Shown here: piece after piece, positions 43,566 to 48,252 of the stretch
How positions within the stretch are numbered: position 1 is the stretch's first letter
How the letters are laid out: the number at the start of each line of letters is the position of its first letter
NCBI GenBank assembly: GCA_048013815.1
Contig: CM106585.1
Location: forward strand, 1,860,001-1,924,000
Reading direction: 5' to 3'
Origin: Setoptus koraiensis
Lineage: Eukaryota > Animalia > Arthropoda
Length of the DNA stretch: 64,000 nt
Notes under the pieces: model-generated
Databases searched by the model: none
Seen by the model: only the letters and a program-made list of their open reading frames with translations
Told to the model about the DNA's origin: nothing
Translations under genes and position numbers: made by a program

Positions 43566-44417
43566 ATGCCTCGATTCGTAACGTGTGGCCCCAATGAGGC
43601 GATAATAGTATCGGGATGTTGTCACTCAAATCCACTCATGGTTCCAGGTGGACGGGTATTTGTCTGGCCTTTATTCCATAAAATACAAAGGATTAGTCTG
43701 AACACCATGACCTTGAATGTTGAATCGCCGAAAGTATATTCCGAAGGTGGTGTCCCAGTGACGGTAAAGGGCGTTGCACAAGTCAAGATACAAGGCAAAG
43801 ACTTGGCCGGACTCAGAGCGGCAATAGAGATGTTTTTGGACAAAACAGAGGACGAAATAATGGATATAGCCAAAGCAACATTGGAGGGTCACCAACGTTC
43901 AATAATAGCCAGTATGGAAATTAAAAATATTTATAAAGATCGCAAAAAGTTCTCGAAGGATGTACAGCAAAGTGCTCAAACTGACCTTATTGATATGGGA
44001 CTAACTTTGATATCATACACCGTACAAGACATATCCGATGACGATGGATATCTAGCTGCCATTGGAGAAGAACAGACTATTGGTGTTAAAACTGACGCCC
44101 GTAAAGAGATGGCTAGAACTAAAAAACAATCAGAATGTAGCAAGATTGATGGCGAAAGATTAAAGAAGGAACATGAGGCGACCAACAATCTTGCAATAGA
44201 ATCGGCAAAGAGGGATTTTGAAATGAAGAAGGCAGAATTTGAATGTGAAGTTTCCACGAAGAAAGCAGAGTCTGATTTGGCTGCGAATTTACAATCGGCC
44301 CAGACAGAACAGAAAATAGTTGGGCAGCAAATGAATGTTAAATTAATGGAGAAAAAATTAGAATCTCAGATACTTCTCAAGAAAATAGAGCAGAGGAAAC
44401 ACGAGTTGAAGGCACAG
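43566..44417 (+). CDS. FLOT1: Flotillin-1, exon 1
   Basis: FVTCGPNEAIIVSGCC...GGRVFVWP...IQRISLNTMTL, TLEGHQRSI (SPFH domain). Donor CAG|GTGAGT at 44418, phase 0. Confidence 0.93.
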
Positions 44418-44527
44418 GTGAGTAAATGCGTAACTAGCTTTATAACTAACTCTTTGAAAGTATTTTTTTTTTCATCTTGTACTAATGGTCGATGATGACT
44501 CCTTTCGTGAATTTGTTCATTTATTAG

Positions 44528-45001
44528 ATCGAACAACAAGCTGACGCAGATTATGAGCGATCCTCAACGCTAGCCGAAGCTTATAAAAAGAAGACAATGC
44601 TAGAGGCAGAAGCAGAGGCCAATGCCATTAGGATAAAATCCGAAGCTGAGGCAGAAGTAATTAAGTTAAAAGCCGAGGCGGATGCAAAACAGCTAGAGGG
44701 AAGAGCTGCGGCGTTCATGGAGTATCAAAGAGCTGCCAAGTTAGATATGGTTCTAAGTATGTTACCTAAGGTGATTGCAGAAATTGCAGAACCACTTTCA
44801 AATTGTAAGGTGACAGTAGTTTCGCAAGATAGTAGCGTTGGACTTTGCAAAATTTCTAGCGAGATATTTTCTATGGTGGATCAAATCACTGAGGCGTGTG
44901 GCGTTGCAAATGTCGGACAACTATCTGCCATCAATAACTCAAATGACAACAATGATCATCGCGGTGGTGGCAGTAGCAGCAGTCATAGTGGCGATAAAAG
45001 A
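44528..45001 (+). CDS. FLOT1: Flotillin-1, exon 2
   Basis: Acceptor TTATTAG at 44527, in frame with exon 1 (ELKAQ|IEQQADA). AEAEA flotillin repeats and KLDMVLSMLPKVIAEIAEPL. Donor AGA|GTAAGT at 45002. Confidence 0.9.
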
Positions 45002-45151
45002 GTAAGTACTTTTTGCTTTATTATTATATATATTTATAAGATACGAAATGTTTACAGCCTGTTAGACTATGATAGAGTAACAAATATATTACCATCTTCT
45101 CAATACTATTCTCAATACTAAAATACCATTCTCAATACTACAATACTGTAG

Positions 45152-45238
45152 AGCCCCCTGGAAACCGAAGCCCCAACAAAATTACAACGTCCATCCACCT
45201 CAAGCTTGTTTAGTGAACGATTCAAGCCGAAGTCGTAG
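45152..45238 (+). CDS. FLOT1: Flotillin-1, probable terminal exon 3 (SPLETEAP...RFKPKS*)
   Basis: Acceptor CTGTAG at 45151, phase 0, 28 codons then TAG. Alternative acceptors exist at 45040 and 45057. Confidence 0.55.
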   Translation, partial: SPLETEAPTKLQRPSTSSLFSERFKPKS

Positions 45239-45253
45239 ACAATAACACCCTAG

Positions 45254-46003
45254 CTAACTTCTGTCCGGTGCAGGAGAATTAACTTTGTACAAAGCTTGGA
45301 AACTAGTGAGAAGCTTCACGTGTTTCTGATTCGACAATGGTGCATCATTAAAATGAGGTCCAATCAACAAAGGTTTTAAGTCCAGCCGAGGCGTCTTCTT
45401 TTCGTCCGAGGGCCTCTCGTCGTCGGCCATTAATTCTTCAGTTTCTTTTGAATCATTTTCTCCCTCTTGGTCGCTGTCATGGTGTTTCTCATCGTCAGAA
45501 ACGTATCCGTGTGGTACAAAGAAGCTCATATCAATCTCGTAGTCTTCTTGCTCTCCTTCGCCCTCGTCCGAGCTGCCATGAAGGCTTTCGCCTGGCCCAC
45601 CAACGTCCCATTCGGCCTCAGAGTCGCACTCGTAATCAAGTAATTCATTGTCTTGATGGAATGGGCGCCGACCCGTTACCTTATTGCTTTTTTTCTGCCA
45701 CGTTCCCCAATAAGGTGGCCTGACATCAACATGAAATTGTAATAATCGAGCCCTCAGTGGACCCCTTGTTTTTCTTCTCAATCTGAATGGTTCATGCGCC
45801 TTGCTTTTTATTTGCTCTAGATATGATTGTGAGGAATTTTGGCTGAGAATAGTTGAATCAAATGTATCCTTGTGATTAATATTAAACTTTTCAACGTGTT
45901 GCTCATTATATTTTGGTGCTAATTTACGATATCTGTCGCACAAGAATTTCTCCTCTTGCTTGGCAGGCGTAATCTTGGTAAAATAGTTAAGAACGGAGGC
46001 CAT
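45254..46003 (-). CDS. CHAF1A: Chromatin assembly factor 1 subunit A (p150/Cac1), highly reduced, 249 aa
   Basis: RLLQFHVDVRPPYWGTWQKKS, LLDYECDSEAEW, GESL, acidic ED stretch, FFVPHGYVSDDE and LKPLLIGP match the CAF1A core. The N-terminal SVLNYF is PIP-like. Confidence 0.93.
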   Translation of the reverse strand: MASVLNYFTKITPAKQEEKFLCDRYRKLAPKYNEQHVEKFNINHKDTFDSTILSQNSSQSYLEQIKSKAHEPFRLRRKTRGPLRARLLQFHVDVRPPYWGTWQKKSNKVTGRRPFHQDNELLDYECDSEAEWDVGGPGESLHGSSDEGEGEQEDYEIDMSFFVPHGYVSDDEKHHDSDQEGENDSKETEELMADDERPSDEKKTPRLDLKPLLIGPHFNDAPLSNQKHVKLLTSFQALYKVNSPAPDRS

Positions 46004-46140
46004 CTTGGTAATTATTTAAGATAATAGAGTACGATTAAAAACAACAATCATGCCAATTCATCTCTAATTCATAATACCGATGCGTAATAGTAAAATAGAT
46101 ACATGTAAATAAAACTGTCCACCTGAGGAATCATCTGTGT

Positions 46141-46270
46141 CGCGGTAAAAAAGGTTTTCACACGTGCCTTCCACAGCGCTTATGGACATTATTAGAGAAA
46201 AAATAATGCGCGCCGCGCGTCAAACAGTCAACTCAACAGCCACAATGGATACAGCGACATTTTTTGGCGT
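46141..46270. promoter_or_regulatory. E2F-like sites upstream of CHAF1A (TTTACCGCG, TTTGACGCGC, TTTGGCG)
   Basis: Three near-TTTSSCGC motifs 140-270 bp upstream of an S-phase gene. None is a perfect match. Confidence 0.3.
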
Positions 46271-46548
46271 AGTTTATGAGGATGGGATCCAAGTGTATCA
46301 GATCTGAAAGCAGAATTAATGGGAAAAAACACGCATTAAAAAATAATCTGGGAGCTTCTAGTATCAAGAACGTCGTAGCGAACAATTGAATGCGACTTTA
46401 TTTGTATGTTTTATTCAAAAGAAGCCACGCATCTCCCACAATAATTAATTATTACATTCTATAGAAACTTGTTTGTGTTGTTGCTGTTGTGTTATTTCAC
46501 TAAATCATATAATGTGATAATAATAAATTTTTGCAATTAATTGCTTAA

Positions 46549-48252
46549 CTAGGCTTGAAATGTAGCAGAAAAGTCTGTTACAATCTTCTTGAGTTTAGCA
46601 TCGGTATCCTCGGTGATCTTGCTTTCCTTGGCGATGCTCTCTAAGATATAAGAATGAGACGCTTTAACGTGAGCCAAAAACTCCTTCTCGAACTTGTTAA
46701 TCTTAGATGGCTCCAGCTTGTCCAAGTAGCCACGGACACCGGTGTACACAACAACAACTTGATCCTCGATTGGCATAGGTACATACTGACCTTGCTTGAG
46801 CAACTCGGTTAGACGAACACCACGATTCAAGAGCTGCTGGGTTGCGGCATCTAAATCGGAACCGAATTGGGCGAAGGCGGCAACCTCACGGTATTGGGCC
46901 AATTCCAATTTCATGGAACCAGCTACTTGTTTCATAGCACGAGTTTGAGCGGCCGAACCGACACGGGACACTGACAAACCGACGTTAATAGCTGGCCTAA
47001 TACCCTTGTAGAAGAGCTCAGTTTCCAAGAAAATCTGACCATCGGTAATAGAAATGACATTGGTTGGGATATAAGCGGACACATCACCGGCTTGTGTCTC
47101 AATAACGGGCAAAGCTGTCAATGAGCCACCACCAAATGACTCGTTCATCTTGGCCGCTCTCTCAAGAAGACGAGAATGGAGGTAAAAGACGTCTCCTGGG
47201 TAAGCCTCACGACCTGGAGGTCTACGCAACAAAAGTGACATTTGACGGTAGGCAACGGCTTGTTTTGATAAATCGTCGTAGATAATAAGGGCATGACGTC
47301 CAGAGTCTCTGAAAGCCTCGCCCATAGCACATCCTGAGTAGGGGGCCAGGTATTGCAGGGGTGCGGCGTCGGAGGCAGTTGCGGCGACGACAATGGTGTA
47401 TTTCATGGCATCAGTGTCTGTTAGCCTTTTAACAATTTGTGCCACAGTGGATCGTTTTTGACCAATGGCGACATATATACAGTACAGTTTTTTCTTTTCA
47501 TCAGTTGAATCGTTGAATCTCTTTTGATTGATAATAGTGTCTACGGCAATAGCTGTCTTACCAGTTTGACGATCGCCAATAATCAATTCACGCTGACCAC
47601 GACCAATGGGCACAAGACTGTCTACAGCCTTGACACCAGTTAACATGGGCTCTCTAACACTTACACGAGGTATGATACCTGGAGCTTTCACGCCCACTCT
47701 GGCTCTTTTGGTAGATTTAATTGGTCCTTTGCCGTCAATTGGGTTACCTAAAGCGTCTACAACACGACCTAACATTTCATCACCAACTGGCACATCGACA
47801 ATGGCACCTGTCCTTTTTACAATGTCGTCTTGTTTGATGAGCTTGTCGTTACCGAAAACGACAATACCCACATTGTCGGGCTCTAAATTAAGTGCCATAC
47901 CCTTTAGACCGGACGAGAATTCAACCATCTCCTCTGCTTGAATGTTCCTAAGTCCGTAAACACGAGCAATACCGTCACCAATAGATAGTACGCGACCAGT
48001 TTCTTCTAAGTTAACGGAACCAGTTTGTGCCAAAATTCTCTCCTCTAGAATGGATGCTACCTCGCCAGAGCCCATCGCTGCTTGTCTGGGTTGCGAAGTG
48101 GACAATTCTCGTTGTTGCTGTTGGTTACCATTGACCATGAAACGAGAATTTCCATTTAGTGAGGCCTGTGTACTCCTAGCCGCCAATTGGGCCAAGCTAG
48201 AGGTCCTGTGATTGTAGAGCCTAAGGGCCGAATTTAGGTGCCTGATCATCAT
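46549..48252 (-). CDS. ATP5F1A: ATP synthase F1 subunit alpha, mitochondrial precursor, single exon, 567 aa
   Basis: [18 protein letters not shown], Walker [32 protein letters not shown] and [19 protein letters not shown], with an Arg/Ser-rich mitochondrial presequence. Confidence 0.99.

What the first reader, a model, noticed from the sequence alone, without database searches (positions are those of the whole stretch)
45254..46003. Minimal CAF-1 p150 that appears to lack both DNA-binding domains (KER and winged helix)
Seen: 249 aa starting at a PIP-like SVLNYF motif, containing the p48/histone-binding core, ED stretch and p60-binding segment, then stopping. The 545 bp up to the ATP5F1A stop contain no K/E/R-rich coding sequence, and FLOT1 occupies the space downstream. 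Known: p150/Cac1 (human ~950 aa) uses the KER helix and C-terminal WHD to bind DNA during H3-H4 deposition, and its N-terminus binds HP1 and SUMO. Inference: CAF-1 reduced to a PCNA-tethered histone-binding core, or a split gene, or a subfunctionalised paralogue.
Basis: partly seen in the sequence, partly recalled or inferred. Interest (0 to 1): 0.72.

Follow-up and report, generated by a model that had tools for sequence, protein, structure and literature searches.

The report
Mite CAF-1 subunit without DNA-binding domains
This gall-mite-type genome encodes a working-looking, 249-residue version of the large subunit of the histone-depositing factor CAF-1 that keeps only the clamp-docking motif and the histone/partner-binding core. 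It has lost both DNA-binding domains that yeast and human CAF-1 depend on, and about 50 related mite sequences share this short form.

Summary
Window 45254-46003(-) is an intact 249-aa ORF with the CAF-1 large-subunit core (Pfam PF12253, E 6e-23). It aligns to human CHAF1A residues 492-709 of 956.

It consists of a PIP-like PCNA motif at residue 1, a p48-side segment, the acidic histone-binding ED region and a p60-side segment, then stops. It has no K/E/R helix and no winged-helix domain (WHD).

It is not a mis-called fragment:
- 52 homologues of 223-383 aa share the same start and end and form one clade (support 99). That clade includes the Aceria tosichella protein, which points to eriophyoid mites.
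- ATP5F1A-CHAF1A synteny is kept, with a gap of only 173 bp in one relative.
- dN/dS against a 91%-identical orthologue is 0.09.
- RNA-like contigs run colinear over both the ATG and the stop.

The loss was stepwise. Oribatid and astigmatid-type mites keep the KER but also end right after the p60-side segment, while spiders and scorpions have KER plus WHD.

No long paralogue or stand-alone WHD was found, but the whole genome could not be scanned. This is a natural equivalent of yeast tCAF-1-deltaWHD, which is defective in vitro. I class it as a new variant of a known kind. How it deposits histones is inferred, not shown.

The parts
45254..46003 (-). Complete single-exon CDS of the short CHAF1A orthologue (249 aa plus stop at 45254-45256)
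   Evidence: ORF list and sequence; PF12253 E 6e-23; dN/dS 0.09 against L001
45974..46003 (-). PIP-like PCNA-interaction motif at the very N-terminus (residues 1-10). It has hydrophobic V4 and aromatic Y7 F8, followed by TK
   Evidence: Y7 nearly invariant, F8 and K10 invariant in alignment A1. The motif sits at residue 1-65 in 44 of 52 clade members. It aligns with the PIP that follows the KER in oribatid, spider and scorpion proteins. PCNA binding itself was not tested
45788..45964 (-). Post-PIP segment (residues 14-72) with predicted helices and the conserved LAP..N.QH...F...FD motif. Probably the p48-side (SSI) region
   Evidence: Conserved columns. AF2 helices at 14-43 and 45-53 with pLDDT 50-69. 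The assignment to p48 binding is inferred from domain order in PMC13604520
45653..45787 (-). Basic segment (residues 73-117, net charge +12) holding the invariant RPPY.GTW...S...GRRP motif
   Evidence: Charge count; invariant columns; aligns to human CHAF1A around residues 560-590
45404..45652 (-). Acidic ED histone-binding region (residues 118-200, net charge -29) with Y124 and W132
   Evidence: The Y-x7-W spacing equals that of S. pombe Y340/W348, which are needed for assembly (PMC10942606)
45257..45403 (-). C-terminal segment (residues 201-249) aligned to human 682-709. Probably the p60-side (MSI) region; the protein ends here, where other species continue into the WHD
   Evidence: The stop codon is covered by a colinear contig at 45096-45310 in run X5
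46117..46226 (-). Putative promoter: three blocks identical to the 91% relative. They are a GC-rich palindrome at 46207-46226, a block with an E-box at 46155-46181, and a block at 46117-46138
   Evidence: Alignment A2; motif scan. The RNA-like contig begins at 46109, and depth is zero at 46156-46362. The promoter role is inferred
46397..46415 (-). Two AATAAA signals that end the upstream ATP5F1A transcript. They bound the CHAF1A 5' region
   Evidence: The X5 contig at depth 72 stops at 46408

Best explanation
[quoted passage not shown] It has been trimmed by evolution to four consecutive modules: a PIP-like PCNA motif at the N-terminus, the p48-side segment, the acidic ED histone-binding region and the p60-side segment. 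The N-terminal region and the K/E/R single-helix DNA-binding domain were lost in the ancestor of this mite clade. The C-terminal winged-helix domain had already been lost in an earlier acariform ancestor. The following steps are shown here: the architecture, its conservation across the clade, purifying selection, conserved synteny, and a self-contained transcription unit. The mechanism is inferred. The protein would still scaffold p60 and p48 and hold an H3-H4 dimer. It would be brought to new DNA solely by PCNA. The trimeric PCNA ring, the histones' own affinity for DNA and perhaps the +12 basic segment would replace the KER and WHD in placing two loaded complexes on DNA.
For: Domain content: PF12253 only, aligned to human 492-709 of 956. 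Clade-wide architecture: 52 homologues of 223-383 aa, most aligning from the PIP-like start to within 4-8 residues of a shared C-terminal F..FQG motif. The clade is monophyletic with SH-aLRT 99, sister to KER-bearing mites and nested among chelicerate CHAF1A. Selection: dN/dS 0.09 at dS 0.60 against L001. Synteny: ATP5F1A then CHAF1A in L001, L002 and L006. The gap is 173 bp in L002/L006, and the stop is a plain TAG with no splice donor. Transcription unit: X5 contigs are colinear over the ATG (45901-46109) and the stop (45096-45310), with none in the intergenic 46156-46362. Promoter blocks are conserved. An exact TTTGGCGC E2F-type site lies 112-172 bp upstream of the ATG in three other mite loci. 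Paralogues: none found that is both long and close. The top five representative clusters are all short, and the next hits are a spider (770 aa) and a scorpion (810 aa) protein, each with KER + core + C2/WHD. Stepwise loss: Oppia nitens RefSeq (554 aa), Oppiella nova (528 aa), P0215, P0058 and the L004 gene have KER + PIP + core and stop right after the core. No WHD-like frame lies within 10 kb of the Oppia gene.
Against: The rest of this genome was not scanned, so a divergent second copy or a separately encoded KER or WHD protein cannot be excluded. The RNA nature of run X5 is inferred from its uneven depth and is not on record. No full-length cDNA was seen. PCNA, p60, p48 and histone binding are inferred from homology only. 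The AF2 monomer model is low-confidence (mean pLDDT 49), so it neither supports nor excludes small folded elements. In yeast the engineered equivalent (tCAF-1 without WHD) assembles nucleosomes poorly and deposits single H3-H4 dimers (PMC5404915). The proposed mechanism therefore needs a compensation that has not been identified.
Confidence: 0.8

Rival explanations
1. Subfunctionalised paralogue: a full-length CHAF1A with KER and/or WHD exists elsewhere in the genome, and this short gene does only part of the job.
For: The genome outside the 64-kb window could not be searched. The branch leading to the short clade is long (1.19 changes per column). That would also fit a fast-evolving duplicate.
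Against: An exhaustive HMMER search of 1.84 billion representatives gave only short proteins among the five closest clusters. The next hits were non-mite chelicerates. The 53 short sequences (the window's protein and 52 homologues) form one clade sister to other mites' single KER-bearing gene, as expected for orthologues. Synteny with ATP5F1A is conserved across the clade.
Confidence: 0.08
2. Split gene: the KER and/or WHD modules are still present but encoded by separate genes that join the complex in trans.
For: Nothing direct. The word-based search has limited sensitivity for a weakly conserved WHD, and KER-like sequence is low-complexity and hard to detect.
Against: A profile of chelicerate WHDs searched against 5.8 billion proteins for short stand-alone ORFs found six. 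The two whose contigs I opened lie in intron-rich genomes, and one has a CAF1A KER exon upstream on the same strand. No WHD-like or KER-like frame occurs in the window or in the mite loci L001, L002, L006 and L007, nor a WHD-like frame around the Oppia gene in L011. Controls scored E 1e-23 to 1e-26.
Confidence: 0.05
3. Mis-annotated fragment: the ORF is one exon of a longer gene whose other exons lie further away.
Against: An in-frame stop lies five codons upstream. The RNA-like contig 45901-46109 crosses the ATG without a joint, and 45096-45310 crosses the stop. The same AAG-ATG-GC context occurs in L001 and L002, where only 173 bp separate it from ATP5F1A. The UniRef Aceria tosichella protein (367 aa) has the same architecture.
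Confidence: 0.04
4. Decaying relic: a remnant of CHAF1A no longer used for chromatin assembly.
For: Loss of two modules that are functionally important in yeasts.
Against: dN/dS is 0.09. There are 43 invariant columns across 16 sequences that are only 35-53% identical, apart from one 91% relative. The ORF is intact in 52 homologues. RNA-like coverage is present.
Confidence: 0.02

Closest known systems
Human CHAF1A (p150), 956 aa, and the 273-residue fragment used for structures 7y5k/7y5l/7y5o
   Same: The mite family profile aligns to human residues 492-709 with E 1.9e-35. This includes the RPxYWGTW motif, the acidic ED region with its Y and W, the FVPHGY motif and the C-terminal p60-side strand. 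The non-canonical PIP resembles human PIP2, which has K rather than Q at position 1. That detail is from my own knowledge; the review PMC13604520 names PIP2 as the critical motif.
   Different: Human p150 has about 440 residues before the core (PIP1, HP1 and SUMO-binding parts, KER 331-441 per PMC10335832). It also has about 240 residues after it, including the WHD. The mite protein has none of these.
Yeast tCAF-1 delta-WHD, an engineered Cac1 lacking residues 1-233 and the WHD (PMC5404915)
   Same: Same module content as the natural mite protein: subunit-binding and histone-binding parts only, with no KER and no WHD.
   Different: The yeast construct is an artificial mutant. It has reduced nucleosome assembly and deposits single H3-H4 dimers. 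The mite protein is a naturally selected form, and it keeps a PIP motif, which the Cac1 deletion of residues 1-233 probably removes. I did not check this against the Cac1 sequence.
CHAF1A of oribatid mites (Oppia nitens XP model 554 aa; Oppiella nova 528 aa)
   Same: These belong to the sister mite group, with the same core and the same abrupt end after the p60-side segment, so they also lack the WHD.
   Different: They retain an N-terminal region and a K/E/R domain of about 150 residues (PF11600) in front of the PIP.
S. pombe Pcf1 (PMC10942606)
   Same: It shows that the WHD need not bind DNA, and that the KER-PIP-ED logic is conserved. Its ED residues Y340/W348 correspond to Y124/W132 here.
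   Different: Pcf1 keeps both the KER and the WHD. KER mutation or WHD deletion makes it deficient for assembly in vitro.

Membership tests
CAF-1 large subunit (CHAF1A / p150 / Cac1 / Pcf1) | Conserved core, Pfam PF12253, including the acidic ED histone-binding stretch with its Y and W | tested here: met
   PF12253 E 6.3e-23, above the curated cut-off. The profile aligns to human 492-709, E 1.9e-35. Y124 and W132 are invariant.
CAF-1 large subunit (CHAF1A / p150 / Cac1 / Pcf1) | Orthology: the protein groups with CHAF1A of related animals | tested here: met
   In the tree the short clade (support 99) is sister to KER-bearing mite CHAF1A (support 90) and sits among chelicerate and arthropod CHAF1A. 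The nearest named long hits are spider and scorpion CHAF1A.
CAF-1 large subunit (CHAF1A / p150 / Cac1 / Pcf1) | PIP box for PCNA just upstream of the subunit-binding region | tested here: inconclusive
   The motif is present and conserved (h4, Y7, F8), but it is non-canonical with no Q at position 1. Binding cannot be tested with these tools.
CAF-1 large subunit (CHAF1A / p150 / Cac1 / Pcf1) | K/E/R single-alpha-helix DNA-binding domain (PF11600) before the PIP | tested here: not met
   No residues precede the PIP. There is no PF11600 hit here, while P0058, spider, scorpion and oribatid proteins do hit it. No K/E/R-rich frame lies in the 545-bp upstream gap.
CAF-1 large subunit (CHAF1A / p150 / Cac1 / Pcf1) | C-terminal winged-helix domain (PF15539 / PF21796 region) | tested here: not met
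   The protein ends at the position of human residue ~709. Alignment A3 shows 150-190 further residues only in spider and scorpion. The WHD profile finds nothing in the window, with controls at E 1e-23.
CAF-1 large subunit (CHAF1A / p150 / Cac1 / Pcf1) | Binding of the p60 and p48 WD40 subunits | not testable with these tools
   Segments homologous to the human regions are present. The mite p60 and p48 genes were not located, and no complex prediction was available.

The most novel reading that the evidence does not exclude
In a whole superfamily of animals, the eriophyoid mites, replication-coupled H3-H4 deposition would run on a CAF-1 whose large subunit has no DNA-binding domain at all. The PCNA ring and the histones themselves would supply every DNA contact. 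Acariform mites in general would do without the winged helix. The KER 'DNA ruler' and the WHD-mediated pairing of two CAF-1 complexes would then be dispensable add-ons rather than core parts of the mechanism.
Probability: 0.45. Interest if true: 0.75.

Novelty: new variant of a known kind. Interest (0 to 1): 0.6.

Why it matters
Current models of CAF-1, from budding yeast, fission yeast and human, give the KER helix and the winged helix central roles. They measure tetrasome-length DNA, release autoinhibition, bring two histone-loaded complexes together and stimulate PCNA binding. Removing both cripples yeast CAF-1 (PMC10335832, PMC5404915, PMC10942606). Here nature has done that double deletion and kept the gene under strong purifying selection in a large animal clade, with an intermediate WHD-less state in other mites. 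That gives a ready-made minimal complex of about 29 kDa for the large subunit. It can be used for structural and biochemical work on which parts of the mechanism are essential and what can compensate. It also adds a concrete case of protein-level streamlining to the genome streamlining known for these mites (PMC7738191). No paper in the searchable library mentions CHAF1A together with mites.

Tried and rejected
1. The AF2 model from alignment A1 came out largely disordered (mean pLDDT 49). I ran no fold search because matches to such a model would be meaningless.
2. The KER profile built from A3 detected the Oppia and L003 KER regions but missed the obvious KER exon of L004, probably because of composition correction. 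Absence of KER therefore rests mainly on the composition scan, on Pfam and on the lack of any residues before the PIP.
3. The human CAF-1 structure paper (PMC11186048) is not held. Residue-level roles in p60/p48 binding are taken from a review, not from the structure paper.
4. Scan notes of this genome hold nothing on a second CHAF1A, on p60 or on p48. This is not evidence of absence.
5. No run is on record as RNA. Expression rests on the RNA-like depth profile of run X5.
6. I considered that the conserved 'GVSC' ending of relatives might be a read-through GTAAGT splice donor. The codons in L002 are GGA GTT TCA TGC GGC TAG, so I rejected this.
7. I considered trans-splicing or an operon with ATP5F1A because of the AG before the ATG and the shared strand. 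There is no support: ATP5F1A has its own AATAAA signals, and the CHAF1A upstream region has conserved promoter-like blocks.

Full report
**1. What is there**

Window 45254-46003 on the minus strand is an uninterrupted 249-codon ORF that begins MASVLNYF. An in-frame TAA lies five codons upstream of the ATG, so the frame cannot be extended without splicing.

Pfam finds one domain, PF12253 (CAF1A_dimeriz), at residues 86-154 with E 6.3e-23. Upstream on the same strand is a single-exon ATP synthase alpha gene (46549-48252, 567 aa). Downstream and convergent is flotillin (Band_7 plus Flot, 43566-45121).

**2. Which parts of CAF-1 p150 it holds**

A profile of the protein and 15 relatives matches human CHAF1A at residues 492-709 of 956 (E 1.9e-35). 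That stretch lies within a 273-residue human CHAF1A fragment used for crystal structures (7y5k and related entries).

A recent review gives the order of modules in the conserved half of the large subunit as K/E/R domain, PIP2, small-subunit-interacting domain, E/D domain, middle-subunit-interacting domain, WHD (PMC13604520). The window's protein breaks down as follows:

| Residues | Content | Net charge |
|---|---|---|
| 1-10 | PIP-like motif | n/a |
| 14-72 | helical segment with a conserved LAP..N.QH...F...FD motif | +1 |
| 73-117 | basic stretch around the invariant RPPY.GTW motif | +12 |
| 118-200 | acidic ED stretch with Y124 and W132 | -29 |
| 201-249 | tail aligned to human 682-709 | +4 |

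The Y-x7-W spacing equals that of S. pombe Y340/W348, whose mutation abolishes assembly (PMC10942606).

Nothing precedes the PIP and nothing follows the p60-side tail. A composition scan of all six frames of the 64-kb window found no K/E/R-rich coding stretch near the gene. A WHD profile built from spider and scorpion proteins found nothing in the window, while it scored E 1e-23 on control loci.

**3. Is the gene model complete?**

Five lines of evidence say yes.

- **Shared ends.** A word-based search found 60 relatives. Of these, 52 (223-383 aa) share the architecture: a PIP-like motif at residue 1-65 with no K/E/R-rich leader, and for most an end 4-8 residues after a conserved F..FQG motif. 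One of them is the UniRef protein of Aceria tosichella, an eriophyid mite (367 aa).
- **Synteny.** ATP5F1A followed by the short CHAF1A is kept in a 91%-identical relative (L001). It is also kept in a 49%-identical one (L002/L006), where only 173 bp separate the ATP5F1A stop from the CHAF1A ATG. There the ORF ends in a plain TAG without a splice donor.
- **Selection.** Against L001 the gene shows dN 0.055 and dS 0.60, so dN/dS is 0.09.
- **Transcripts.** Run X5 has depth 72 over the ATP5F1A 3' end, stopping at 46408 between two AATAAA signals. It has depth 0 over 46156-46362 and depth 3-7 in patches over CHAF1A. This is an RNA-like profile, although the run is not on record as RNA. Its contigs run colinear over the ATG (45901-46109) and over the stop (45096-45310), with no joint at the AG before the ATG.
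- **Promoter.** The window and L001 share three perfectly conserved upstream blocks at 46117-46226, including a GC-rich palindrome and an E-box. Three other mite loci (L002/L006, Oppia L011, L004) carry an exact TTTGGCGC E2F-type site 112-172 bp before the ATG. That fits an S-phase gene with its own promoter. The promoter role is inferred.

**4. Paralogue or split gene?**

An exhaustive HMMER search of 1.84 billion cluster representatives gave 1556 hits. The five best (E below 1e-42) are all short, at 236-361 aa. The next hits (E about 1e-32) are long proteins of 765-1053 aa. Those I looked up by name are CHAF1A of the spiders Larinioides and Parasteatoda and of the scorpion Centruroides. The three I named carry KER (PF11600), the core and the C-terminal C2/WHD region (PF15539).

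In a maximum-likelihood tree, the window's protein and its 52 short relatives form one clade (SH-aLRT 99). This clade is sister (support 90) to a group of KER-bearing mite proteins, and the window's protein plus L001 are the earliest branch within it.

A profile of chelicerate WHDs searched for short stand-alone ORFs returned six hits. The two whose contigs I opened lie in intron-rich genomes. In one, a KER-coding exon sits about 8 kb upstream on the same strand.

I therefore find no support for a paralogue or a split gene. I could not scan the rest of this genome, so neither is excluded.

**5. A stepwise loss**

Oppia nitens (RefSeq model, 554 aa), Oppiella nova (528 aa), P0215, P0058 and the two-exon gene in L004 all have an N-terminal region, a K/E/R domain of about 150 residues, the PIP and the core. 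All stop right after the p60-side segment. In L004 the stop is followed by an AT-rich tail with AATAAA. In Oppia the next gene (NCBP3) starts about 700 bp downstream, and no WHD-like frame lies within 10 kb. Spider and scorpion proteins continue for 150-190 residues into the WHD.

The simplest reading is that the WHD was lost in an acariform ancestor, and the N-terminus plus KER were lost later in the eriophyoid ancestor. The direction of these changes and the taxon sampling (no Trombidiformes seen) make this an inference.

**6. Which organism**

Four observations point to an eriophyoid mite:
- named hits in the short clade (Aceria);
- chelicerates as the nearest long hits;
- an intron-poor, compact locus;
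- earlier scan notes that call this genome an eriophoid mite.

The scan index lists the genome as two pieces with 775 windows. Together with the basal tree position, that is compatible with a phytoptid-type eriophyoid like the 47-Mb, two-chromosome assembly described in PMC11920263. I did not establish the species.

**7. How it probably works**

Shown here: the protein keeps the parts that in human and yeast hold p48, p60 and H3-H4, and a PCNA-type motif. It lacks both known DNA-binding modules.

Known from experiment:
- Yeast CAF-1 lacking the KER and with a DNA-binding-dead WHD is severely impaired in vivo (PMC10335832).
- Yeast tCAF-1 without the WHD assembles nucleosomes poorly and deposits single H3-H4 dimers (PMC5404915).
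- S. pombe KER and WHD mutants fail in assembly in vitro (PMC10942606).

Inferred: in these mites recruitment and DNA proximity come from PCNA alone. The trimeric ring could bring two loaded complexes together. The histones' own DNA affinity, the +12 basic segment, or changes in p60 or p48 could provide what the KER and WHD do elsewhere. None of this was testable here.

**8. Verdict**

The protein is a CHAF1A orthologue by descent but fails two features of the canonical architecture, so I class it as a new variant of a known kind. No paper in the library links CHAF1A and mites.

Interest is moderate to high. It is a natural, selected version of a double deletion that is deleterious in model organisms, and it comes with a natural intermediate.

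Noticed in passing
L011:10001-11745 (Oppia nitens), L004:3716-5272, L003:578-1837: CHAF1A of oribatid and astigmatid-type mites keeps the KER but ends right after the p60-side segment. The winged-helix domain therefore seems to be missing from acariform mites in general, not only from this genome.
   Followed up: partly
window 46207-46226, 46155-46181, 46117-46138; L002:7806-7813; L011 and L004 upstream regions: The window and its 91% relative share perfectly conserved upstream blocks: a GC-rich palindrome, an E-box CACGTG block and a third block. Three other mite loci have an exact E2F-type TTTGGCGC 112-172 bp before the CHAF1A ATG. In L002 that site sits inside the 3' UTR of ATP5F1A, before its AATAAA.
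   Followed up: partly
window 45095-45124: Assembly graphs of two runs (X3, X5) break at the same place between the convergent 3' ends of FLOT1 and CHAF1A. X3 carries a 22-nt loose end there. This is probably an indel or structural polymorphism in the shared 3' region.
   Followed up: no
window 45269: A T>A difference appears in runs X3 and X5. It is synonymous (Ala codon GCA to GCT on the minus strand).
   Followed up: yes
window 45003-45121: The flotillin second ORF contains a GTAAGT-type donor near 45005, followed by a low-complexity tail up to the stop at 45121. Whether the last ~38 codons are coding or intronic is open. Either way FLOT1 and CHAF1A end within about 130-250 bp of each other.
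   Followed up: no
window 46549-48252: ATP synthase alpha (567 aa) is intronless. Its adjacency to CHAF1A is conserved in relatives only 49% identical in CHAF1A, an unusually stable micro-synteny.
   Followed up: partly
window residues 73-87 of the protein (45743-45787): Oribatid, spider and scorpion proteins have a variable insert with acidic residues (15-45 residues, IIIES-type) before the LLQF motif. The short clade has none, which leaves a compact run of basic residues. This could be a small compensatory DNA-contact patch, but that is speculation.
   Followed up: no
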